A DNA stretch of 64,000 nt, taken from assembly GCA_047495785.1 (NCBI GenBank), contig JBLDXI010000024.1:3782001-3846000 (forward strand). Direction: 5' to 3'. Shown here piece after piece: positions 1,015-63,704 of this stretch. Origin of the DNA: Lepidodermella squamata. Lineage: Eukaryota > Animalia > Gastrotricha. The notes under the pieces were generated by a model. The model ran no database searches. It was not told the origin of the DNA and worked only from the letters and a program-made list of their open reading frames with translations. The translations under genes and the position numbers were made by a program. The number at the start of each line of letters is the position of its first letter. Position 1 is the first letter of the stretch.

Positions 1015-2310
1015 TTATTTCTTGCTCGTAACAGTGGTGAAAGCCTGCAGTCCAGTAATCGCACGTCCGAGAATCAAAGCGTGAACATCAGCCGTGCCTT
1101 CGTAAGTATTAACAGTTTCCAAATTCACCATATGCCTAATAATGTGGTACTCGTCCGAAATTCCGTTTCCGCCCAAAATGTCGCGGCAATGGCGAGCGAT
1201 GTCAAGTGATTTTTGACATGAGTTGCGTTTGATGAGAGAAACCATTTCCGGGACAAGAAGGCCTTGTTCCTTCAACCGACCGACCTGATGGCAAGCTTGT
1301 AGACCAATGCTAATTTCGGTCGCCATATCGGCGAACTTCTTTTGGATCAACTGCATCTGAGCGAGGGGCTGGTTAAACTGAATGCGGTCCAATGTATACT
1401 GCCTTGCAGCGTGGAAGCAAAACTCGGCAGCTCCGAGAGCTCCCCAAGCAATACCATAGCGAGCTTGATTTAAACATGAGAAGGGTCCGTTCAGACCTTT
1501 GGCGGTGGGAAGAAGCGAGCTTTCCTCATCAACAACCACGTTATCCATCACGATCTGACCAGTAATGGACGCCCTCAGAGACATTTTACCATGAATGGTT
1601 GGAGTTTCGAAGCCTTTCATACCGCGCTCGAGAATAAAGCCTCGAATAGGTTTGCCGGGTTCAGAAACACTCTTAGCCCAAACGACTGCGATATCGGCAA
1701 TAGGTGAGTTTGTGATCCAAGTTTTCGATCCGCTTATTTTGTAACGACGTTTACCGCTCGATTCATCCAGAACAGCGACTGTTTCCATGCCACTTGGGTT
1801 TGAACCATGGTTGGGTTCAGTAAGACCAAAACAGCCAATCAGCTCACCACGAGCAAGGCCGGGGATGTATTTGTTCTTCTGAGCATCTGTCCCGAAGGTG
1901 AAAATTGGGTACATCACGAGGGAAGACTGGACGGACATCGCGCTACGATAACCACTATCAACGCGCTCGATTTCCCGTGCCATCAACCCGTACGCGACAG
2001 GAGAGACGCCGGCGCAACCGTAGCCAGTTAGAGATGCACCAAGCGCGCCAACTTCCCCTAGTTCTTTCATAATTGCTTTGTCGAAATGCTCATTGCGGTT
2101 AGCTTCCACAATGCGAGGCATCAACTTCGATTGACAAAATCCTCGGAACTGATCTCGGGCAAGCTTTTCCTCCTCAGTCAGAACAGTTTCGAGATTCAAT
2201 GGGTCCAAATAGCTAAAGGAGAGGCCAGATTTTGATGACAGGGCTCGGCTCATTTTGCCGGCCAACGATAGCTTGCTGCTGAAGCTTCCGAGAGCCTTCA
2301 TCGACATCAT
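1015..2310 (-). CDS. GCDH: Mitochondrial glutaryl-CoA dehydrogenase (intronless CDS; start Met uncertain among 2310/2307/2301)
   Basis: [74 protein letters not shown]; Ser/Lys/Arg-rich transit-peptide-like N-terminus. Confidence 0.95.
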
Positions 2311-3576
2311 CGCGGAAACTGCTTTGATATGAAACCTAAGAAACATCAATTTATATGGAAAACCTGAATTCTAGGATCTGCGAGTTAAGAATCTAGAGCT
2401 GAGCTCGACATCACGGCGAGAAAACACAGAACGCAAGTAGCATAAACACTGAGCTAACAACGTCAATATAAAAATGTTCAGTCGATGAGAAATAATCAGC
2501 ACTTGGGTGAACACTGGGAGGATTTACGCCAAATAGCAATCAATCATAACCACACCCTCGTGAAGCAGGCAACTTAATGTCCCGCTGCCGTCTTAAATCT
2601 AGGTCAACCAAGGTTCAGCAGCGAAGGCAGAAAAGGAAAGAGAACACGCGGTTCATCATTAATCACTAATCACGTGATAAAATTAAAATAATCAATTACA
2701 TATTATCACACAATAAAAAATAAATATTATCGATCTTATTAATTATGCGTGAACTATTAAATTTGCCGGGAAATTTTTTCAATAACGTGGGTTTTAGCGG
2801 TCGCGTGAAAAGCTGAAAAGAGTCCAGAGTCCAAGCGCCCCGAAATAAAGGATCCTGTTTTTTTCATGAACTACGCGAGTAACGTCGATTATTTTGTCTC
2901 TTTAACATGTCGCTTGTCTCGATGTCTTCTTTTTTCTCTTAATGTTGACCGCATCTGGGTCACACGCCACTGATAAAATCCAGTCAATACACAGTAACAA
3001 CTGCTCTTGACTCTTGAGTTTCAAGCATTCGCGACCCTGCCGGCAACTGCCAGGAGAATTTATTGATTTTTTCGTGCCGGACAGGTCCTCGCACCCCCTA
3101 TTAATTCAGCCTACCTATCACTTTCCCGTGCATATCAGACCCAGGTTCAGATTGATTTCAGTTTGCTGATGTTGCGCTTATTAATTGCTCGATGCCAGAT
3201 ACCTATTGTAATCAACTATTGTAATTAGTGTAGGCTAATTCAGCTTGCTATGTTCTCCGATTTGGATTTTTGCGGCTCTTGGGTGAATAGTTACAAGCAT
3301 AGCAATGACCTCTTGCCATGGCGGCTAAGTCAGCGCTACTCCATATCGCCGTTCGCCATTTCTGAATTGCGAATTCCACGATGAAGGTTTTTGTTTTGAA
3401 TGCCTAATCACATACCTGTGAAGCTATTTTTGCCTTCACTGATCACTGATTATTATTTCCCAACTCTCAACTCGTCAACCCGGTTGTATCGTGTATGCTT
3501 GTTTTCTAGTCTTATTTATTATAATTGTATTTAGCCATCCAATAATCATCAGCGAGCTGTTAGCTAAGTTAGCGCA

Positions 3577-23369: not shown

Positions 23370-23488
23370 GCACTCTGGTTTCCGCGCAGAACGTACAAAT
23401 CTTTCGCCTTTTACTAAAGATTTCCGTGCGTGGGAACATTCAATGAGCCTTCGGGCGATTTCTTGGGCTTCTCCTTCGACGAGAAGCG
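23370..23488 (+). ncRNA. U5: U5 spliceosomal snRNA, copy 1
   Basis: 5' ACTCTGGTTTC, invariant loop I stem AAATCTTTC-GCCTTTTAC-TAAAGATTTCCGTG, Sm-like GATTTCTTGG, 3' hairpin GCTTCTC..GAGAAGC. Confidence 0.93.
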
Positions 23489-23624
23489 AAATTAAAAAGA
23501 ACAAAATTCCCTCATTATGTCGTAGAACGTATATAATTTTAGCGGCTTCAGACTATCTATACGTTGTTCTCAAATTTTATCTCTTGGATTGGTTGGCCTC
23601 TAGAACAGTTCTCACTTTCATCAG

Positions 23625-23696
23625 GCGTCAGTGGTGTAACGGTCAGCATTGTTGCCTTCCAAGCAGCCGATCCGGGTTCGACTCCCGGCTGACGTA
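23625..23696 (+). tRNA. tRNA-Gly(TCC)
   Basis: 72-nt cloverleaf, anticodon loop CT-TCC-AA, GTTCGA T-loop; G1:T72 variant relative to the 62223 copy. Confidence 0.9.
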
Positions 23697-23781
23697 CAGT
23701 TTTTAGCTCACGTTTGAGGGTAGCAAACACATGACTAGTAAAAAGATTAAAGCTGATCTTCATCAAAGTTCGAGTTCGCGA

Positions 23782-23853
23782 GGTTCCATGGTGTAGCGGT
23801 TAGCACTCTGGACTCTGAATCCAGCGACTCGAGTTCGATTCTCGATGGGACCT
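23782..23853 (+). tRNA. tRNA-Gln(CTG)
   Basis: GGTTCCATGGTGTAGCGG..CTGGA-CTCTGAA-TCCAG..GTTCGA. Confidence 0.93.
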
Positions 23854-23951
23854 TGACATGTTTTTCAAGGAAACTTGGCTCACTGAACCGCTGGAAACCT
23901 TGCGATCATAATAGTTTTACCATGTTGTGAACCTTTTCTTTCACTAGCCTA

Positions 23952-24023
23952 GGGGGCATAGCTCAGTGGTAGAGCGTCTCATTCGCATTGTGAAAGTCTC
24001 GGGTTCAATCCCCGATGCCTCCA
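23952..24023 (+). tRNA. tRNA-Ala(CGC)
   Basis: G3:U70 identity pair, loop TT-CGC-AT; one T-T mismatch in the anticodon stem shared by all three copies. Confidence 0.88.
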
Positions 24024-24077
24024 GTTGGCAATTTTTTCGCGCAACTCCAAGATTAGTGCTAAAAATGGGAAAAGTAG

Positions 24078-24161
24078 TGTCAGAAGTGGGGTTCGAACCC
24101 ATGCCCTCTTTCGAGGACCAGATCTTGAGTCTGGCGCCTTAGACCGCTCGGCCATCCTGAC
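24078..24161 (-). tRNA. tRNA-Leu(CAA), intronless
   Basis: GTCAGGATGGCCGAGCGGTCTAAGGCG-CCAGA-CTCAAGA-TCTGG, long variable arm, 84 nt. Confidence 0.92.
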
Positions 24162-37707: not shown

Positions 37708-38086
37708 ATGGCGGCGAATACTTTGATTGGAGATCCTGAACGCGGCAAGCAAGTTTTCATGAAAGCTTGTGCCCACTGCCACTCCATTGAGCTAGGTGGC
37801 AGAACAATTTTCGGCCCAAATTTATTTGGAATGTATGGCAAGAAAGCCGGATCGGTCGAAGGCTATAATTACACGCAAGGGCACAAAAATCTTGATTTGA
37901 CATGGAACAAGCAGTTATTAGACATCTACTTGGAAGGTAAATTGTGTAACTTATGACGATGCAAGCACTAAATATATGAAATCAGATCCTTATAAAATGG
38001 TGCCTGATACCAAGAAACATTATCATGGTCTCAAAAACGAACACGACCGCGCCGACGTCATCGCTTACATGGAACAAAAGAAGTGA
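37708..38086 (+). CDS. Divergent cytochrome c paralogue 1 (109 aa; exons 37708-37936, 37986-38086); Lys at the Met80 position
   Basis: GDPERGKQVF..CAHCH, GPNLFG..GKKAG, W59, YLE, D-P-Y-K-M-V-P-D-T-K-K-H-Y-H-G, RADVIAYM; 49-nt GT-AG intron keeps the frame. Confidence 0.92.
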
Positions 38087-38259
38087 TTCTGTTGTAACTT
38101 GTCGTTCTCACTTTCATATCAACCATAGCTCACCAATAGGGGTTACGGTCATTACGTCGTGCTTTGAAACGCCCACTCGATTCGATTTGAATCGGCCTAA
38201 GGTTCTCAATTGAATAAATTATTGTGATTTCATAGGCATTTAAAGTATACTTTTGCTAA

Positions 38260-38644
38260 ATGGCGGCGAATGCTATGATTGGAGATCCTGAGCGCGGCAA
38301 GCAAGTTTTTATGCAATTTTGTGCCCACTGCCACACCATTGAGCGACACGGCGGAAATATTTTCGGCCCAAATTTATTTGGAGTGTATGGGAAGAAAGCC
38401 GGATCGGTTGAATACTATAATTACACGCCAGGACACAAAAATCTCGATTTGACATGGAACAAGCAGTCATTAGACATATACTTGGAAGGTAAAATATGTA
38501 ACTTATGACGATTCAAGTACTAAATATATGAAATCAGATCCTCATAAAATGGTGCCTGGTTCCAAGAAATATTATTTCAAATGGGGTCTGCAAGACGAAC
38601 GCGACCGCGCCGACGTCATCGCTTACATGGAACAGAAGAAGTGA
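38260..38644 (+). CDS. Divergent cytochrome c paralogue 2 (111 aa; exons 38260-38488, 38538-38644); Lys at the Met80 position
   Basis: Tandem ~550 bp duplicate of paralogue 1; CAHCH; D-P-H-K-M-V-P-G-S-K-K-Y-Y-F-K-W-G. Confidence 0.92.
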
Positions 38645-38787
38645 TTCTGTTGTAACTTGTCGTTCTCACACTCTTATCAAGTATAGCTCACCGATAGAGG
38701 TTTTAGTCATTACACCGTGCCTTGAATCGCCCACTCATAAGGTTCTCGATTGAATAAATTATTGTTATTTCATAGGCATTTAAAGTA

Positions 38788-41418
38788 ATGGCGAACAGCC
38801 AGGAAGCAGCGAAAGTTTACTACAATGAAACCTATGGTGCTAGTTTGTTGAAATCTTTATCTTCCATTTTGGAAGACAAGCATCTTTGTGATGTCACCAT
38901 TGTTGTAAGTCAGATTGATTATTATTGAATGCATCAATTGCATTCGATACTTTAGGTTGGAGATCGTGAATTGCAGTGTCACAAGGTGATTCTAGCGGCC
39001 AGCATTCCATATTTCCGCTCAATGTTTACATACAATATGTTGGAATCAACCATGTCGAAAATCACTCTGCAAGAACTCGACCCCACGACAGTTGAAAGCC
39101 TGATTCACTACGGCTATTCAGGGCAGTTGCGAATTACGACTGATAACGTCGTGCAGCTGCTTCACGACTCGACTTTTCTGCTGCTGAATGACGTTCAAAA
39201 CGCGTGCTGTGACTTTTTGACCAATCGCCTGAGCAAAGACAATTGTTTCCGCTTACTGCAAATCGCACAAGACTTCGCGTGCATCAAACTACGCGAATCT
39301 TGCCTGCGTTTCATCTACAAAAATTTCATTCAACTATCACAGTGTGAAGAATTCCGCCAATTAGACTTCAACCAAGTGAAACAACTCTTCGGCTCAGATC
39401 TACTTGAAATTGTCTCAGAAGAGCAGGTTTTCGATGCCTTGATGGAATGGGTCCGTTTCGATGAAGACCTACGCAGAGATCACATTGCTGAGCTATTTTC
39501 GCTTGTCAGACTGCCTTTGATCTCGCCAAGCACGCTGGCTGATCGAATCGGCAAAGAGCCTCTCATCCAGTCGAATTTGATGTGCCGCGATTTGTTGGAC
39601 GAAGCTCGAGATGTTCATTTAATGCCAGAGCGGCGGAGTCGGATTGAGGCGTACAAAATCACGCCCCGTTGCTGCCAGAGCCCACTTGGTATTATCTATG
39701 TAGCCGGTGAAGTGACCCTGGGCCGTGGGTCCATTCTCGAGTCATACGATCCGGTTGTTAATCGCTGGACGCCAGGTCTAGCGCTGCCGAATCTAAGAAC
39801 AAGGGCGGCTTTGTGTTCTCTGGACAAGGTTATTTATGCAATTGGCGGCGTTGATGGCCGAGACCGAGTTCGGACCGCTGAAATGTTCGATACTCTCAAA
39901 GGTATTTTCGAGAAAAATATTTGGAGATTGCAAATTTGCTAGATTTTGTGGGAATTATCTATGCACCTTTCTCTATAGCATTTTCATTATGTTGAAAATT
40001 TTTAGCGGTGTTAGTCACGTGCCCAGTTTTTTCTGCTGTTTGTGTGCAGCGGCATATGAATCAGCAAACAAAAGGAAAAGTAAAGAAAGTTAAGCAGAAT
40101 CCTCTTGGGAAACAAGTGAACAAAATGAATTGGCAGAAACAATTGGGCACGTGACCAAAATCACTTGTAAAATTTGTTTTGAACTAAGTGAAAATGCGTA
40201 AAAAGGTGTAGAAAGCCATTGAGCTTAAATTAAATTTATTTTAATTTTTGATATTTTAAAAGAAAACTAAGGAATAATTTAGAAGTAGTTTATATTCGTG
40301 ATTTCTTGGTTTGTGTTATACTTGCATTCAAGAATGGCTCCTGGATTCTCCATTCGCAATATTTCTATCGTTTTTAGGCGATTTTCATGCCTGTTTTTGT
40401 TGAATTCATTAGATTCAAGTGATGATGATTTTTCAGGCGAATGGCGGCCGCTGCCGATGATGGCGACCCAGCGATCGGCCCTGAGTGTCGCCGCTGTCGA
40501 AGACCTCGGCATTTTCGTGCTGGGCGGCTACTCCGGGGCTGTTTCGCTCAACCAATGCGAACTGTACCGGTTGTCGACGAAACGCTGGGAATCACTACCG
40601 TCACTTTCGAAACAACGCTCCGCCTCGGGCGTCGTCTCTTTCAACGACCGCGTCTTTGCTATTGGCGGCCATGATGGCGTTTCGATCTTTCACTCGTGCG
40701 AGTTTCTCGCCTCGTCATCTCTAGTCGAAAATCAGGTAAGAAAATTTAAAAATTGCAAATTAGTATGCAATTCGAGTTTTTCCTCATTTTATAAAAAATC
40801 TTCTTGTCCAGTGTTCTCATTTTTTTCTCGAATTTTCTCGAAAATTAGGGTAACGGAAATTCTACGACGAACTCTGGCGCGGCGCACTGGATCGAACTGG
40901 CGCCCTTGACAATGAAGCGATGCCGGCTGGGCGCGGCGTGCATCGGCAACAAAATCTACGCAGTTGGCGGCTACGACGGCTCGCAATTTCTCACATCGGT
41001 CGAGTATTTCGACCTTGAAAAGCAACGCTGGTTCGAGGCGAAACCGCTCATGGCCAAGCGCTGCCGACTAGGTAACCACAATTAAAAATTTAATTTTAAG
41101 AAAATATGAATTTTTGTCATCGAAATTTGAAAAATTGGTCTGATTTTCTATTTTCTATTTAATTTAATTTAAATTGAATTTCAAGTTTAATTTTATTATT
41201 TTTTTCTTAATAAATTCGTTGATTTTTTTTAATTTATTGAAATAATTTTGTTTTAAGGCGTGGCTGCGTCTGGCGGTTTGATGTATGCAATGGCCGGTTG
41301 TGAAAACAACACCAATCTAGGCACGGTCGAGTGCTACGACCCGCGCGCCGATCGCTGGCACACCGTCGCGCCGTTGTCGAGCATTTCCGGCGGCTGTTCG
41401 GCCACAACCGTGTGCTAA
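38788..41418 (+). CDS. KLHL18: BTB-BACK-Kelch protein, KLHL18-like; exons approx 38788-38903, 38956-39901, 40437-40735, 40849-41071, 41258-41418
   Basis: LCDVTIV, CHKVILAASIPYFRSMFT (BTB), BACK domain, CRDLLDEAR..HLMPERR, kelch repeats incl. IGGHDGVSIF, GGYDGSQFL.SVE; gene symbol is a best guess within the KLHL family. Confidence 0.8.
39961..40210. repeat. Degenerate inverted-repeat element in a KLHL intron
   Basis: gcacctttc..gcattttca / tgaaaatgc..aaaggtgta and gtcacgtgccca / tgggcacgtgac pairs. Confidence 0.5.
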
Positions 41419-42056: not shown

Positions 42057-42129
42057 TGGAGGATACGGGCGTCGATCCCGTTACCTCTCGCATGCTAAGC
42101 GAGCGCTCTACCATTTGAGCTAATCCCCC
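42057..42129 (-). tRNA. tRNA-Ala(AGC), intact
   Basis: GGGGGATTAGCTCAAATGGTAGAGCGCTCGC-TTAGCAT-GCGAG..GGGATCGAC; G3:U70. Confidence 0.93.
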
Positions 42130-42213
42130 TTCGCAGTCAACGCCACGGCAAGTGATTTGACGAAGCGGCGAAAACAGCCGAATGCAGCAGAAGTGAGCAA
42201 GGAAAGAAACTTG

Positions 42214-42278
42214 CGCCCTCTGGGGGACTCGAACCCCTGACCCTGTGACACATGTTTTACCGACTGAGTTAGGAAGGC
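42214..42278 (-). pseudogene. tRNA-Lys(TTT) pseudogene with the anticodon loop deleted
   Basis: Aligns to 63054-63126 but lacks ACTTTTAA (catgtg|tcacagg) and has D-stem substitutions. Confidence 0.85.
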
Positions 42279-42361
42279 CATTGTGATTATTCTTGACAGC
42301 TTGACAGATTATATTCTGCTGCTGATAACACCTCAGCCGAAAACGGCAACAAAAATAGAGC

Positions 42362-42477
42362 CGAAGTTGATGGGACTCGAGCCCATAATCTTCGGATCCG
42401 AAGTCCATAGAAATCAGATCAGATTAATCTGATCTCTATGCCGAAGTCCGACGCGATAGCCATTTCGCCACAGCGCC
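42362..42477 (-). pseudogene. tRNA-Arg(TCG) pseudogene interrupted by a 35 bp CATAG...CTATG insert with 8-bp duplication
   Basis: CCGAAGTC (42398-42405) | CATAGAAATCAGAT..ATCTGATCTCTATG (42406-42440) | CCGAAGTC (42441-42448); T54C change and mismatched acceptor stem. Confidence 0.85.
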
Positions 42478-42587
42478 TGTCACAGGAAGTGCCGTACGGT
42501 ACAGCCTATACAAGATTTGAGGTTTAATGAATGCTCGAAGCTGAACACGCTGGTTTATCTAAATCCGATTGAAAGTTCGGTCAGGCA

Positions 42588-42671
42588 GTCAGGATGGCCG
42601 AGCGGTCTAAGGCGCCAGACTCAAGATCTGGTCCTCGAAAGAGGGCGTGGGTTCGAACCCCACTTCTGACA
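42588..42671 (+). tRNA. tRNA-Leu(CAA)
   Basis: Same sequence as the 62713 copy; 84 nt. Confidence 0.93.
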
Positions 42672-42758
42672 CTAATTTTCACATTTTTCAGCGGAATTTT
42701 CGATCATTTTGACCGATATGAACATATCTTCGAGAGGTTGCGCGAAAAAATTGCCAAC

Positions 42759-42830
42759 TGGAGGCATCGGGGATTGAACCCGAGACCTTCACAATGCGAA
42801 TGAGACGCTCTACCACTGAGCTATGCCCCC
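42759..42830 (-). tRNA. tRNA-Ala(CGC)
   Basis: Reverse complement of the 62550 copy. Confidence 0.88.
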
Positions 42831-43004
42831 TAGGCTAGTGAAAGAAAAGGTTTGAATGGTAACGAATATTCTGATCGCAAGTTTCCAGCAGTAGAGAGTG
42901 AGCTAAGTTGGATTGGAAAAACTTCAAAACGTAAAGCTTCAAAACGTTATAAAGTTGTTATGATCGAAAGCAGTGAGAAGTGAGTTTGTTTGAAAAAACA
43001 ATCA

Positions 43005-43076
43005 AGGTCCCATCGAGAATCGAACTCGAGTCGCTGGATTCAGAGTCCAGAGTGCTAACCGCTACACCATGGAACC
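43005..43076 (-). tRNA. tRNA-Gln(CTG)
   Basis: Reverse complement of the 23782/62384 copies. Confidence 0.93.
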
Positions 43077-43444
43077 TATCGGCATCTATATGGATCCCGG
43101 GAACCTCTCGAACCCTGGTTTGATGAACATCAGCTTTAATCTTTATAAATAGTCTGAATGAAACCACTAAAATTTGCAACGTTCCATGACGCAACAATCC
43201 GATAATTTTGTTATTTTATAGCCCCGTTTTCATTTGACACGTTCTTACCAATAGACACTTGGTTATAGCAATGCTTATCAAATAAAAAGGGTAATATCTC
43301 AATAAGACGACTATTTTAACAAAACAGCCAACTGAGTGACTCAATAATTAATTCCCGGCAAATTTTCTTCCAGAAATACATGATCGCAAACGATTCTGAT
43401 ACTCGTAACTAAAGTTTTATTTAGAGTTTATCTCAAGGCCACAT

Positions 43445-43560
43445 TTTCTAGAAAATTCTCTTAGGACTGATGGCGGAATTTTCTAGAAACGTCTGAAACG
43501 TCTGCATTTTCTCGAACACTCTATGTTGCTTATTCCAGAATGTTCCATTCGGCTTTATAT
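43445..43560 (+). promoter_or_regulatory. Heat-shock promoter of sHSP B: three perfect HSEs plus TATA-like box
   Basis: tTTCtaGAAaaTTCt (43445-43459), gGAAttTTCtaGAAa (43475-43489), aTTCcaGAAtgTTCc (43532-43546), TTTATAT (43554-43560). Confidence 0.85.
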
Positions 43561-43698
43561 CACTCGAACTCCACAAAGTCTCTGTGTATCTGAAAAAGCC
43601 TGAAAAAGCAAATTTGAAATCGATTATCAACTCTCTTACTTTGAGTTTCAAGTCATCTTCGCTGTTGTTTATTATCATTCCGTCACCGAGCAATTGAA

Positions 43699-44325
43699 AT
43701 GAGCTTCTGGCTTACGACCTATCCCCGCCCAGCCGTCTTTGACTGGCCATCGCTCGTCTGTGATGACCACCTGGCCGACATGGCGCTGTCGAATTTCCTC
43801 GACTACGACCGCTCGTTCGAGGCCCTCGGCCACGAGATGAACCGCCTGCGCCGCAACATGGACCGCAATTTCCGCGCCTCGCAGCAGCAACTGGCGAGCG
43901 CCCTCAACAACATGGCGACGCGGCCGGGCAGTCTGCTGGAGCACCGCAGCCTCGTGAACCCGATCGAGACGGACGCGGAGGGCAACCGGCGGCTGAAGTG
44001 CACCTTCGACCTGCGGCACTTCAAGCCCGAGGAGGTGAACGTGACGCTGGACTCGAAGCAGCGCTGCATCAAGGTCGAGGCGAGCCACGAGACCAAGGAC
44101 GAGCAGAACCGGGCGAGCGTGAAGCGCCACTACCTGCGCCACCTGTACCTGCCCGACGACGCCAGCATCGACCCCGCCAAGCTGGAGCTGCAGTCGAGCA
44201 TGAGCCACGACGGCCAGCTTCACATCGAGGCGCCGCTGCCAAAGCTGTCGCCACCCAAGGTTGAAGCACCCCCACAGCAGCCAGCCATTGCCGCGCAGAC
44301 TCTGATCACTGTCAATCGCGTCTGA
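43699..44325 (+). CDS. Small heat-shock protein (HSP20), copy B; inverted paralogue of 22112-22738
   Basis: 208 aa with alpha-crystallin domain; central region essentially identical to copy A. Confidence 0.93.
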   Translation: MSFWLTTYPRPAVFDWPSLVCDDHLADMALSNFLDYDRSFEALGHEMNRLRRNMDRNFRASQQQLASALNNMATRPGSLLEHRSLVNPIETDAEGNRRLKCTFDLRHFKPEEVNVTLDSKQRCIKVEASHETKDEQNRASVKRHYLRHLYLPDDASIDPAKLELQSSMSHDGQLHIEAPLPKLSPPKVEAPPQQPAIAAQTLITVNRV

Positions 44326-44598
44326 AATGGCGCCGAAATTAAACTTGGACTTATTGGCTGACATTTTCTAGTGCCTGTTATTAGCTCTTCAATGTGCTCC
44401 GCTATGAACTGTATCGATCAGTCATTTGTGATTATAATTTTCAATAAAATAGATGAATAATCAAGTTTTTGCTTCATTTTTTTGAGCCATGGTAAGCTTA
44501 AAGTCATTAGTTTATTGGCGCTGTCTTCGATGCGATGAGATCGCGAAATACAGGTTTTTGGGTACTTATCTGAATCAAATTGAAATTTCAGCCAGGCA

Positions 44599-44682
44599 GT
44601 CAGGATGGCCGAGCGGTCCAAGGCGCTGCGTTCAGGTCGCAGTCAGTTTCTACTGGCGTGGGTTCGAATCCCACTTCTGACA
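44599..44682 (+). tRNA. tRNA-Leu(CAG)
   Basis: GTCAGGATGGCCGAGCGGTCCAAGGCG-CTGCG-TTCAGGT-CGCAG, long variable arm, GTTCGAA. Confidence 0.93.
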
Positions 44683-44792
44683 CTAATTTTTTGACAGTCT
44701 TCACTTTCGTGTAATTTGTTTATGCAAATGACTACTTAGGAGTAGCAACATCTTCCTCGCGAAAGGGCTTGAAGTGGGGGTATGCATTTCGT

Positions 44793-44911
44793 TCACTCTG
44801 GTTTCCGCGCAAAACGTACAAATCTTTCGCCTTTTACTAAAGATTTCCGTGCGTGGGAACATTCAATGAGCCTTCGGGCGATTTCTTGGGCTTCTCCTAT
44901 GACGAGAAGCG
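44793..44911 (+). ncRNA. U5: U5 spliceosomal snRNA, copy 2
   Basis: Near-identical to 23370-23488, including loop I GCCTTTTAC and the 3' hairpin. Confidence 0.93.
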
Positions 44912-62065: not shown

Positions 62066-62147
62066 GTCGCTATGCCCGAGTGGTTAAGGGGTCTGACTAG
62101 AAATCAGATGCGGTCTCCGCGCGTAGGGTCAAATCCTACTGGCGACG
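62066..62147 (+). tRNA. tRNA-Ser(AGA); B-box variant (GGTCAAA), possibly impaired
   Basis: 82-nt cloverleaf with long variable arm, loop CT-AGA-AA; T54 replaced by G. Confidence 0.75.
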
Positions 62148-62222
62148 ACATTTATTTTTGCATTATAACGACTGAAACTCAGTTCTGTAGTTAGCCTCCA
62201 GAACAGTCCTCACTTTCATCAG

Positions 62223-62294
62223 GCGTCAGTGGTGTAACGGTCAGCATGGTTGCCTTCCAAGCAGCCGATCCGGGTTCGACTCCCGGCTGACGCA
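62223..62294 (+). tRNA. tRNA-Gly(TCC)
   Basis: Complete cloverleaf; flanks homologous to the 23625 copy. Confidence 0.93.
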
Positions 62295-62383
62295 CACGTT
62301 TTTAGCTCACACGTTTGAGAGAAACAAACACATTTTACTAGTAAATAGATTGAAGCTGATCCTCACCAAACCAGGGTTCAACA

Positions 62384-62455
62384 GGTTCCATGGTGTAGCG
62401 GTTAGCACTCTGGACTCTGAATCCAGCGACTCGAGTTCGATTCTCGATGGGACCT
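62384..62455 (+). tRNA. tRNA-Gln(CTG)
   Basis: Same sequence as the 23782 copy. Confidence 0.93.
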
Positions 62456-62549
62456 TGATTTTTCAATCAAACTTGGCTCACTGCTCACTGCTGGGAACCT
62501 TGTGATCATAATATTTGTTACTATTCAAACCTTTTCTTGCACTAGCCTA

Positions 62550-62621
62550 GGGGGCATAGCTCAGTGGTAGAGCGTCTCATTCGCATTGTGAAGGTCTCGG
62601 GTTCAATCCCCGATGCCTCCA
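62550..62621 (+). tRNA. tRNA-Ala(CGC)
   Basis: G3:U70, anticodon CGC. Confidence 0.88.
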
Positions 62622-62712
62622 GTTGGCAATTTTTTCGCGTATCCTCTCGAAGATTAGTTGCTATATCGGCGGTGAAAGTGACCGGAAATTACTCTAAAAA
62701 TGTGAAAAATAG

Positions 62713-62796
62713 TGTCAGAAGTGGGGTTCGAACCCACGCCCTCTTTCGAGGACCAGATCTTGAGTCTGGCGCCTTAGACCGCTCGGCCATCCTGAC
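62713..62796 (-). tRNA. tRNA-Leu(CAA)
   Basis: 84-nt type II tRNA. Confidence 0.93.
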
Positions 62797-62915
62797 GAGA
62801 TGTAGCTTCAAAAGGAAGTTTTTGTAATCCACTCATTTCCGCGTAGAAAAACTCACCTCCATGTGGAAGCTGCCGTTGACAGGATGGGCGTATTGCATTG
62901 CTACATCTATCGATA

Positions 62916-62988
62916 GGCGCTGTGGCGAAATGGCTATCGCGTCGGACTTCGGATCCGAAGATTGTGGGTTCGAGTCCCATCGATTACT
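62916..62988 (+). pseudogene. tRNA-Arg(TCG) with a defective 3' acceptor strand
   Basis: D, anticodon (TCGGA-CTTCGGA-TCCGA) and T arms intact, but GGCGCTG faces CGATTAC. Confidence 0.75.
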
Positions 62989-63053
62989 TTTGTAACAGGT
63001 GAAAGTGCCAGCTAAATGTAACGAAGCTCTCAGAATAGCTGTCATTTGCAATG

Positions 63054-63126
63054 GCCTTCCTAGCTCAGTCGGTAGAGCATGTGACTTTTAATCACAGGGT
63101 CGGGGGTTCGAGTCCCCCGGAGGGCG
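63054..63126 (+). tRNA. tRNA-Lys(TTT), intact
   Basis: GCCTTCCTAGCTCAGTCGGTAGAGCATGTGA-CTTTTAA-TCACA..GTTCGAG. Confidence 0.93.
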
Positions 63127-63197
63127 CAAGCTTTTTCAAAGCAATACACCGAAGTCACTGTTTTAATCATAGCAATAAATCGTCTAGTTACTACTAC

Positions 63198-63263
63198 GGG
63201 GGATTAGCTCAAAGCGCTCGCTTAGCATGCGAGAGGTAACGGGATCGACGCCCGTATCCTCCA
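63198..63263 (+). pseudogene. tRNA-Ala(AGC) with a 7-nt D-arm deletion
   Basis: Matches the 42057 copy except for a 7-nt deletion removing the D-loop TGGTAG. Confidence 0.85.
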
Positions 63264-63339
63264 ATTTTTCTCGCAGAATCTCATAACCTGGCTAGACTTC
63301 TCTACGAATAATGCTACTGCTGCAGAAATACCCAGCCTC

Positions 63340-63409
63340 GGCTCAGTAGCTTAGTGGTAGAGCGTCTGCCTAGTAAGCAGAAGATCGAGGGTTCGATCCC
63401 CCCGAGCCT
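63340..63409 (+). pseudogene. tRNA-Thr(AGT), probably defective (about 2 nt missing at the T-stem/acceptor junction)
   Basis: TCTGC-CTAGTAA-GCAGA anticodon arm; 3' end CCCCCCGAGCC is too short to pair both stems (could also be a homopolymer sequencing error). Confidence 0.65.
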
Positions 63410-63484
63410 TGCTTGACTTTTTCGGCGGCAAGCTATCTTTTTTCGTGCCAAAACATACAATTGACATTGCAAAGCTCAAAAACT

Positions 63485-63556
63485 TTCCCTGACCGGGAAT
63501 CGAACCCGGGCCGCCGCGGTGAAAGCGCGGAATCCTAACCACTAGACCATCAGGGA
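63485..63556 (-). tRNA. tRNA-Glu(TTC)
   Basis: TCCCTGATGGTCTAGTGGTTAGGATT-CCGCG-CTTTCAC-CGCGG..GTTCGATT. Confidence 0.93.
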
Positions 63557-63632
63557 GCTGCTCATGCGATTTCGTTTGCGCGGTATCTCAGACGTACACC
63601 ACAAAAGCCAAGTTCTGAATGTAAAAATCTTT

Positions 63633-63704
63633 GGGCCCGTTCGGGAATTGAACCCGAGACCTCTCGCACCCGAAGCGAGAATCATACCCCTAGACCAACG
63701 GGCC
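63633..63704 (-). tRNA. tRNA-Pro(CGG)
   Basis: GGCCCGTTGGTCTAGGGGTATGATT-CTCGC-TTCGGGT-GCGAG..GTTCAATT. Confidence 0.93.

What the first reader, a model, noticed from the sequence alone, without database searches (positions are those of the whole stretch)
37708..38644. Two intact cytochrome c paralogues with Lys in place of the Met80 heme ligand
Seen: after splicing out the 49-nt intron, both genes encode full-length class I cytochrome c with CAHCH, GPNL.G, W59, Y67, R91 and Y97. The canonical loop NPKKYIPGTKM80IFAG instead reads DPYKMVPDTKK-HYHG (copy 1) and DPHKMVPGSKK-YYFKWG (copy 2). The codon is AAA in both copies, two changes from ATG, which argues against a sequencing slip. Established: Met80 is the near-invariant distal axial ligand of mitochondrial cytochrome c; loss of Met80 ligation (alkaline His/Lys conformer, Met80 mutants) sharply lowers the redox potential, and an open distal site promotes peroxidase activity and ligand binding. 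Inference: these are not respiratory electron carriers but a natural His/Lys-, bis-His- (H81/H83 in copy 1) or five-coordinate heme c protein family with another role, such as peroxidase, gas/redox sensor or apoptosis regulator.
Basis: partly seen in the sequence, partly recalled or inferred. Interest (0 to 1): 0.85.

Follow-up and report, generated by a model that had tools for sequence, protein, structure and literature searches.

The report
Lysine-80 cytochrome c gene pair
Two neighbouring animal genes encode mitochondrial-type cytochrome c in which the textbook-invariant iron-binding methionine (Met80) is replaced by lysine; one copy has been kept by selection across species, so it is probably a working heme protein that no longer carries respiratory electrons.

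Summary
Two tandem genes (37708-38086 and 38260-38644, + strand) each have one 49-nt GT..AG intron and encode 109- and 111-aa mitochondrial-type cytochromes c. Both keep CAHCH, W59, Y67, R91 and Y97 but have Lys (AAA) at position 80.

Copy 1 is not decaying. A syntenic orthologue in another species (L001, also followed by the Kelch-like gene) has an intron at the same codon and the same KKHYHG loop. Synonymous sites are saturated there (pS 0.85 vs pN 0.21).

Copy 2 is a young tandem duplicate. It has 11 private amino-acid changes against 1 in copy 1, so it may be changing function or decaying.

In 106 canonical eukaryotic cytochromes c, M80, N52, Q16 and K72 were invariant. All five K80 sequences found (the two window copies, L001, a copepod protein, a metagenome protein) also carry N52H. 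Asn52 belongs to the hydrogen-bonded triad next to Met80. Most have also lost docking lysines.

The best reading is a His/Lys-type, low-potential heme c protein with a non-respiratory role. I found no paper describing this.

The parts
37708..37936 (+). Copy 1, exon 1 (residues 1-76 plus the first base of codon D70). Holds the N-terminal helix, CAHCH at 37768-37782 and the H52 codon CAC at 37882-37884.
   Evidence: Pfam PF00034 39.7 bits against a cut-off of 21.3. Best solved relatives are animal mitochondrial cytochromes c, E about 1e-19.
37937..37985 (+). Copy 1 intron, 49 nt, GT..AG, phase 1.
   Evidence: Its removal is the only splice that restores the conserved cytochrome c YLE|DP junction and a full-length cytochrome c. 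The orthologue L001 has an intron at the same position and phase.
37986..38086 (+). Copy 1, exon 2: DPYKMVPDTKKHYHGLKNEHDRADVIAYMEQKK plus stop. The K80 codon AAA is at 38015-38017; H81 is at 38018-38020 and H83 at 38024-38026.
   Evidence: The loop is 14/16 identical to L001.
38213..38235 (+). AATAAA (38213-38218) followed by a tttcatag acceptor-like site (38228-38235), 24 nt before the copy 2 ATG. Read as a possible intercistronic signal, not shown to be one.
   Evidence: Read directly. The same arrangement is duplicated before the Kelch-like gene (alignment). First-stage notes on this genome report spliced-leader/operon signatures (unchecked).
38260..38488 (+). Copy 2, exon 1. CAHCH at 38320-38334; H52 codon at 38434-38436.
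   Evidence: Pfam PF00034 36.6 bits.
38489..38537 (+). Copy 2 intron, 49 nt, 45/49 identical to the copy 1 intron.
38538..38644 (+). Copy 2, exon 2: DPHKMVPGSKKYYFKWGLQDERDRADVIAYMEQKK plus stop. The K80 codon AAA is at 38567-38569. A 6-nt in-frame insertion adds K and W.
38753..38775 (+). Second copy of the AATAAA (38753-38758) plus tttcatag (38768-38775) element, 12 nt before the Kelch-like gene ATG.
38788..40909 (+). Downstream BTB-BACK-Kelch (KLHL-type) gene. It is the synteny anchor and not part of the cytochrome function.
   Evidence: Pfam BTB, BACK and Kelch hits. L001 1233-1421 matches window 38803-39042 at 65-86% amino-acid identity.

Best explanation
Copy 1 is a selectively maintained derivative of mitochondrial cytochrome c. 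It still binds heme c through CAHCH/His18 and keeps the heme pocket (G29, P30, L32, Y48, W59, Y67, L68, T78, R91). The distal ligand Met80 is replaced by Lys80, and Asn52 of the Asn52-Tyr67-Thr78 hydrogen-bond triad next to residue 80 is replaced by His.

Inferred mechanism:
- The protein is imported into the intermembrane space and given heme by holocytochrome c synthase like any cytochrome c; K7, F10 and CXXCH are kept.
- Lys80 (or the adjacent Lys79) ligates the ferric iron, giving a low-spin His/Lys heme with a midpoint potential several hundred mV below the roughly +260 mV of the His/Met form.
- The exposed heme-edge face is also remodelled: K13 to A/F, Q16 to H, K27 to I, T/V28 to F, K72 to Y/H, V/I81 to H/Y, F82 to Y, K87 to N/D.
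- It therefore cannot shuttle electrons from complex III to complex IV. It would work as a low-potential redox, ligand-exchange or catalytic heme protein with a different partner.

Copy 2 is a recent tandem duplicate of copy 1. It is evolving about as fast as neutral sequence, so it is either taking on a new function or starting to decay.

Shown: gene structure, K80 and H52, orthologue conservation, the rate asymmetry between the copies, and loss of docking residues. Inferred: heme attachment, Lys ligation, low potential, non-respiratory role.
For: Gene models and K80. Family: PF00034; best solved relatives are animal mitochondrial cytochromes c.

Orthologue L001:
- Same intron position and the same KKHYHG loop.
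- The Kelch-like gene follows it, as in the window.
- pN 0.206 vs pS 0.851, Fisher p about 1e-21.
- Nucleotide similarity is confined to coding sequence.
- Loop 70-85 is 14/16 identical vs 56/91 for the rest.

Position-by-position table: canonical set M80, N52, Q16, K72, F82, K86 and K87 all 106/106. K80 set: H52 5/5, H16 4/5, aromatic residue 33 5/5, A/S40 5/5, S/T42 5/5, K72 1/5, hydrophobic residue 27 4/5. pI is 8.5 vs 9.6-9.7.

Literature:
- Asn52, Tyr67 and Thr78 form a hydrogen-bonded triad next to Met80 that stabilises Met ligation; Lys-ligated cytochrome c conformers sit near -137 mV (PMC12188557).
- In TsdA heme 2, His/Lys is -129 mV and His/Met is +266 mV (PMC6879331).
- Plasmodium cyt c-2 shows that a divergent heme crevice can make a dispensable, non-respiratory cytochrome c with an open site (PMC10175771).

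Copy 2: 11 private amino-acid changes against 1 in copy 1 (Tajima p 0.004); terminal branch 0.29 vs 0.055.
Against:
- A canonical cytochrome c in the same genome is known only from an unchecked note.
- Met74 is conserved in copy 1, copy 2 and L001 and could supply a Met ligand after loop refolding.
- Lys must be deprotonated to ligate, so an open or water-bound site is equally allowed by the sequence.
- The family is tiny in public data: one orthologue and two distant K80 proteins.
- Whether the K80 proteins share one origin is unresolved (p-AU 0.45, long branches).
Confidence: 0.58

Rival explanations
1. The distal site is open. Lys80 does not ligate; it stays protonated and hydrogen-bonds within the Y67/H52/T78 network. 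The heme is then five-coordinate, water-bound or, in copy 1, transiently His81/His83-bound. The protein would act as a peroxidase-like or small-ligand-binding (NO, sulfide, peroxide) heme enzyme, with His52 as a second-shell acid-base group.
For: Plasmodium cyt c-2 is pentacoordinate and binds imidazole and peroxide through crevice divergence alone (PMC10175771). His appears at positions 52, 16 and 81 around the heme in most K80 proteins. Triad-destabilised yeast variants populate a water-ligated state at lower pH (PMC12188557).
Against: In engineered and alkaline cytochromes c, a lysine in this loop readily takes the sixth position at neutral pH. H81 and H83 are absent from copy 2 and from the copepod protein. 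There are no activity data.
Confidence: 0.2
2. The protein is still a Met-ligated, high-potential electron carrier. Met74, conserved in the window clade, or a redox-linked Lys-to-Met switch as in A. vinosum TsdA heme 2, restores Met ligation. The genes would then be lineage-specific respiratory isoforms.
For: M74 replaces the otherwise conserved Y74 in copy 1, copy 2 and L001. A Lys/Met ligand switch exists naturally in TsdA (PMC6879331).
Against: - The two other K80 proteins lack M74 (Y and T).
- Residue 74 is six positions from the ligand site, so ligation would need a refolded loop.
- K13, K27, K72 and K87, invariant or nearly so in canonical proteins, are lost.
- The stem branch is very long (1.1 substitutions per site) compared with canonical cytochromes c.
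Confidence: 0.12
3. These are decaying duplicates. Both genes would be young non-functional copies of cytochrome c whose reading frames have not yet been broken.
For: Copy 2 shows about the neutral rate: pair dN/dS is 0.5 overall, with nearly all replacements on the copy 2 branch. By my rough estimate, not a tool result, an intact 111-codon frame after this much neutral change is not improbable (about 0.3). No expression data exist.
Against: For copy 1 this is contradicted by the syntenic orthologue. Synonymous sites are saturated while only 21% of replacement sites differ, and the intron position and KKHYHG loop are conserved. All heme-pocket residues are kept in both copies. The indel in copy 2 is in frame and its splice sites are intact.
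Confidence: 0.06

Closest known systems
Canonical mitochondrial cytochrome c (animal CYCS type; Pfam PF00034)
   Same: About 46% identity to vertebrate cytochrome c over exon 1, and the same length. Shares CXXCH, His18, G29-P30-N31-L32, Y48, W59, Y67, L68, P71, P76, T78, K79, G84, R91 and Y97. It is an intron-bearing nuclear gene. Best solved matches are horse, human and rat cytochrome c.
   Different: M80K, N52H and Q16H, where 106/106 canonical proteins have M, N and Q. Also loses K13, K27, K72 and K87, has F82Y and V/I81H, a lower pI and a very long stem branch.
Plasmodium falciparum cytochrome c-2 (PF3D7_1311700; PDB 7TXE)
   Same: A second, highly divergent cytochrome c paralogue beside a canonical one. 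It has a rewritten heme-crevice loop and has lost Lys72. It is given heme by HCCS but is dispensable and unsuited to the respiratory chain (PMC10175771).
   Different: Cyt c-2 keeps the Met80 equivalent (Met112) and is pentacoordinate through loop divergence. The window proteins have lost the Met itself and are much less divergent overall. No common origin is implied, and direct homology to cyt c-2 was not tested here.
Lys-ligated (alkaline) conformers and triad variants of yeast or horse cytochrome c
   Same: Lysine from the 70-85 loop replaces Met80 as sixth ligand, giving low-spin His/Lys heme near -137 mV. The Asn52-Tyr67-Thr78 triad controls the Met/Lys balance (PMC12188557).
   Different: Those are pH- or mutation-induced states of a Met80 protein, using Lys73 or Lys79 after loop refolding. 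Here Lys sits at position 80 itself in a natural, conserved gene, with His at 52.
Heme 2 of Allochromatium vinosum thiosulfate dehydrogenase TsdA
   Same: A natural c-type heme with His/Lys ligation, with measured potentials of -129 mV (His/Lys) and +266 mV (His/Met) (PMC6879331).
   Different: It is a bacterial di-heme enzyme in which Lys switches to the neighbouring Met on reduction. The window proteins have no Met next to Lys80.
Eurytemora 'cytochrome c-like' XP_023342656.1 (P0067) and the metagenome protein P0143
   Same: These were the only other eukaryote-type cytochromes c with K80 found. Both also have H52, an aromatic residue at 33, A/S40 and S/T42.
   Different: Only 40-50% identical to the window proteins. 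The Eurytemora gene has introns at other positions, and P0143 is intronless on its contig and groups with a canonical protein. A single origin is neither shown nor rejected (p-AU 0.45). Neither protein is described in any paper I could find.

Membership tests
Class I / mitochondrial-type cytochrome c (PF00034) | CXXCH heme-attachment motif with the proximal His | tested here: met
   CAHCH at 37768-37782 and 38320-38334.
Class I / mitochondrial-type cytochrome c (PF00034) | Profile match above the curated cut-off, with nearest solved relatives being mitochondrial cytochromes c | tested here: met
   PF00034 at 39.7 and 36.6 bits against a cut-off of 21.3, for exon 1 alone. PDB best hits are animal cytochromes c at E about 1e-19.
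Class I / mitochondrial-type cytochrome c (PF00034) | Conserved heme-pocket residues (G29, P30, L32, Y48, W59, Y67, L68, P76, T78, K79, G84, R91) | tested here: met
   All are present in copy 1. Copy 2 differs only by T78S.
Class I / mitochondrial-type cytochrome c (PF00034) | Three-dimensional cytochrome c fold | not tested
   The spliced protein cannot be handed to the structure tool by reference. The fold is inferred from about 46% identity to solved cytochromes c.
Respiratory cytochrome c (electron carrier between complexes III and IV) | Met80 as distal axial ligand | tested here: not met
   Lys (AAA) in both copies and in L001. The canonical set is M in 106/106.
Respiratory cytochrome c (electron carrier between complexes III and IV) | Ring of docking lysines around the heme edge (K8, K13, K27, K72, K86, K87) | tested here: not met
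   Copy 1 has Q8, A13, I27, Y72, K86 and N87. Copy 2 has Q8, F13, I27, H72, Q86 and D87. K72, K86 and K87 are 106/106 in canonical proteins.
Respiratory cytochrome c (electron carrier between complexes III and IV) | Midpoint potential near +250 mV and activity with complexes III and IV | not testable with these tools
   Needs recombinant holoprotein.
Natural His/Lys-ligated c-type hemes | A lysine placed to reach the distal iron position | tested here: met
   Lys occupies the ligand position itself in an ungapped alignment, with Lys79 beside it.
Natural His/Lys-ligated c-type hemes | Spectroscopic His/Lys signature (EPR, MCD, NMR) and low potential | not testable with these tools
   Reference values come from PMC12188557 and PMC6879331.
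Processed or decaying cytochrome c pseudogene | Frame disruption, loss of the intron, or a neutral substitution pattern | tested here: not met
   Frames and splice sites are intact and the intron is kept. Copy 1 vs L001 gives pN 0.21 vs pS 0.85. For copy 2 alone the rate test is inconclusive: it is near neutral.

The most novel reading that the evidence does not exclude
M80K together with N52H (and usually Q16H, an aromatic residue at 28 and 33, and loss of K72) defines a previously unrecognised class of invertebrate mitochondrial cytochrome c-like proteins. The class is either ancient and mostly lost, or has evolved repeatedly. In it the Asn52-Tyr67-Thr78/Met80 unit has been rebuilt as His52-Tyr67-Thr78/Lys80, giving a stable low-potential His/Lys heme, possibly with a redox-linked ligand switch, and a new docking face. 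Its job would be something other than respiration, such as peroxide or small-ligand chemistry in the intermembrane space.
Probability: 0.35. Interest if true: 0.8.

Novelty: new variant of a known kind. Interest (0 to 1): 0.68.

Why it matters
Met80 ligation is the textbook invariant of mitochondrial cytochrome c. It sets the high potential needed for respiration, and its loss is the switch studied in apoptosis-related peroxidase work.

Here the Met is replaced by Lys at the ligand position itself, in a natural gene conserved across species. The paired change is in Asn52, one of the three residues that tune Met ligation. Such a protein would give biophysicists a native His/Lys cytochrome c to compare with alkaline and engineered forms. 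It would also show what a cytochrome c scaffold is used for once it is freed from respiration.

The N52H/M80K pairing is a concrete hypothesis that can be tested at the bench. It also gives a simple sequence signature for finding more members in invertebrate genomes and transcriptomes.

Tried and rejected
- **Expression check:** There is no RNA-seq evidence either way.
- **More orthologues:** the word-indexed search with exon 1 gave only P0001 and a bacterial protein. The exhaustive profile search gave P0001 as the only close relative, and most of its top 150 were multi-domain bacterial cytochromes. The JGI metagenome scan gave only matches of up to 46% identity over the full exon, apparently bacterial.
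- **P0285 (Nucella):** it looked like the nearest relative of P0143, but it is a canonical cytochrome c with a partial duplication.
- **Orthology with the Eurytemora K80 gene:** its intron positions differ and the tree join is a long-branch pairing, so orthology is not claimed.
- **Alternative Met-bearing exon or other splice forms:** none found.
- **Organism identity:** the GCDH homologue list and tree place the window, with an ENA metagenome contig, beside eutardigrades only weakly (aLRT 91; no nematodes in the set). The Atlas search, Rfam and a paper search for the sample accessions gave nothing decisive. The organism is left as an unidentified small invertebrate.
- **Canonical copy in the same genome:** only an unchecked note exists, and the look-up by sequence was blank.
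- **Structure prediction:** not run. The spliced protein has no reference and the tool gives no coordinates for ligand geometry.
- **Literature:** four searches found no report of a natural Lys80 mitochondrial-type cytochrome c.

Full report
**What is there.**
The + strand between 37708 and 38644 carries two tandem genes about 550 bp apart. Removing one 49-nt GT..AG intron from each (37937-37985 and 38489-38537) gives the only reading frames that join the conserved YLE to DP. The products are 109 aa (copy 1) and 111 aa (copy 2).

Exon 1 of each matches Pfam Cytochrom_C above the curated cut-off. The nearest solved structures are animal mitochondrial cytochromes c, at E about 1e-19.

Both proteins keep CAHCH, GPNLFG, Y48, W59, Y67, L68, P71, P76, K79, G84, R91 and Y97. 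Both have Lys, codon AAA, at position 80 (38015-38017 and 38567-38569). No Met-bearing alternative exon exists anywhere in the window. The gap drawn after KK is unnecessary: copy 1 aligns without gaps as K79 K80 H81 Y82 H83 G84. Copy 2 has a two-residue insertion before G84.

**The duplication.**
The repeated unit runs from about 12 nt before the ATG, through the coding sequence and the 3' flank, to an AATAAA followed by tttcatag. This element sits just before the copy 2 ATG and again just before the ATG of the downstream BTB-BACK-Kelch gene. The layout looks like short intercistronic spacers. First-stage notes on other pieces of this genome report spliced-leader and operon signatures (unchecked). 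A copy 1 - copy 2 - Kelch operon is therefore possible, but not shown.

Divergence between the copies:
- Introns are 45/49 identical and the 3' flanks are 88% identical.
- dS is 0.20 and dN is 0.10.

**Is it alive?**
The word-indexed protein search with exon 1 returned one close relative, P0001. It lies on a 1.4-kb Logan contig (L001) and is a read-through of an intron. Spliced at the same codon and phase (56-nt intron), L001 encodes a 107-aa protein whose loop reads DPYKMAPGTKKHYHG.

L001 is the orthologous locus. Its cytochrome gene is followed by the start of the same Kelch-like gene, at 65-86% amino-acid identity. It carries one cytochrome gene there, so the duplication is specific to the window's lineage.

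Between copy 1 and L001:
- 85% of synonymous sites differ, against 21% of replacement sites (Fisher p about 1e-21).
- Nucleotide similarity is confined to coding sequence.
- The rewritten 70-85 loop is the best-conserved segment, 14/16 identical against 56/91 elsewhere.

Copy 1 is therefore under strong purifying selection with Lys80 in place.

Copy 2 is different. With L001 as outgroup it carries 11 private replacements against 1 in copy 1 (p 0.004), and its terminal branch is five times longer. Its changes include A13F, G45Y, T78S, H81Y and H83F. Its replacement rate is close to its silent rate. It is either changing function or beginning to decay, and its intact frame does not discriminate.

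**How unusual is Lys80?**
I aligned 106 single-domain eukaryotic cytochromes c returned by the searches. They span insects, mites, crustaceans, molluscs, flatworms, an annelid, an echinoderm, a frog and fungi. M80, N52, Q16, K72, K79, F82, K86 and K87 were each invariant.

Only two other eukaryote-type proteins had K80:
- P0067 is annotated 'cytochrome c-like' in the copepod Eurytemora.
- P0143 comes from a JGI metagenome contig.

All five K80 sequences also have His at position 52. Four of five have His16, a hydrophobic residue at 27 and an aromatic residue at 28. All five have an aromatic residue at 33, A/S40 and S/T42. Only one keeps K72.

Asn52, Tyr67 and Thr78 are described as a hydrogen-bonded triad next to Met80 that stabilises Met ligation (PMC12188557). 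The paired change N52H + M80K therefore falls inside one structural unit.

Whether the K80 proteins share one origin is open:
- The window clade joins the Eurytemora protein on the tree, but that is a long-branch pairing.
- P0143 groups with a canonical protein.
- Monophyly of the K80 set is not rejected (p-AU 0.45).
- The Eurytemora introns are at different positions.

**Mechanism.**
These points are established from the literature:
- Lys-ligated cytochrome c conformers have potentials near -137 mV.
- In TsdA heme 2, His/Lys sits at -129 mV against +266 mV for His/Met (PMC6879331).
- Plasmodium cyt c-2 is a divergent paralogue that keeps its Met but has an open heme site. It receives heme from the synthase yet is dispensable and unsuited to the respiratory chain (PMC10175771).

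From these I infer that copy 1 is imported and given heme like any cytochrome c. K7, F10 and CXXCH, the features named as important for the synthase, are kept. Lys80 would provide the sixth ligand, giving a low-spin, low-potential heme that cannot accept electrons from cytochrome c1.

The heme-edge face used for docking is remodelled (positions 13, 16, 27, 28, 72, 81, 82, 83, 87), and the pI drops from about 9.6 to 8.5. That points to another partner or substrate.

Three rivals remain:
- An open or water-bound site with peroxidase-like chemistry.
- Met ligation rescued by Met74, which is conserved in the window clade but absent from the other K80 proteins.
- Decay, which is excluded for copy 1 and still open for copy 2.

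**Limits.**
- The presence of a canonical cytochrome c in this genome rests on an unchecked first-stage note (s1-380129).
- The organism is unidentified. Its glutaryl-CoA dehydrogenase is 89% identical to genes on environmental metagenome contigs and sits weakly beside eutardigrades in a tree that lacks nematodes.
- No structure was predicted, because the spliced protein has no reference.
- Four literature searches found no description of a natural Lys80 mitochondrial-type cytochrome c. The library does not cover subscription journals.

**Verdict.**
This is a real, conserved and so far undescribed variant of mitochondrial cytochrome c. It is defined by M80K coupled with N52H, sits beside a fast-evolving young duplicate, and has a well-founded but untested His/Lys low-potential mechanism.

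Noticed in passing
window 23370-24161, 42057-44910, 62066-63704: There are three dense tRNA gene clusters, about 21 tRNA hits in all. Two near-identical-scoring U5 snRNA genes (23370-23487 and 44793-44910) each sit beside a cluster. These may be segmental duplicates of a small-RNA gene block.
   Followed up: no
window 1015-2349 (- strand): An ORF of 444 codons encodes a glutaryl-CoA dehydrogenase with no intron inside it. It is 89% identical to genes on two ENA metagenome contigs (L004, L005), and no named species exceeds about 73%. The source animal or a close relative therefore occurs in environmental samples but lacks an annotated relative in the database.
   Followed up: partly
window 38213-38235 and 38753-38775: AATAAA is followed within 10-15 nt by a tttcatag acceptor-like site, directly upstream of the next gene's ATG. 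This suggests that copy 1, copy 2 and the Kelch-like gene form a trans-spliced operon.
   Followed up: partly
L002 7987-8721 (Eurytemora contig KZ485197.1): The intron before exon 3 of the copepod K80 cytochrome c-like gene holds more than a dozen tandem, degenerate copies of an exon-3-like fragment (NSGLQWTESNLNMF).
   Followed up: no
P0150 / L028 (Logan ERR4677226): This is a further eukaryote-type cytochrome c without Met80 (PGTKTFFKP, Thr at position 80). It has a roughly 45-residue N-terminal extension, His16 and Phe28, and it groups with the K80 clade on the tree.
   Followed up: partly
P0009 cluster and P0022 (bacterial di-domain cytochromes c, metagenomes): These are two-domain periplasmic cytochromes c. 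The first domain has GTKM, but the second has Ala at the Met80 position (KGTKARFPG or KGNKANFPG), conserved across 14 cluster members.
   Followed up: no
P0285 (Nucella lapillus ACOMHN_021740): This annotated 157-aa protein is a canonical cytochrome c followed by a partial second copy of its N-terminal half. It is probably a gene-model or assembly artefact at a tandem duplicate.
   Followed up: no
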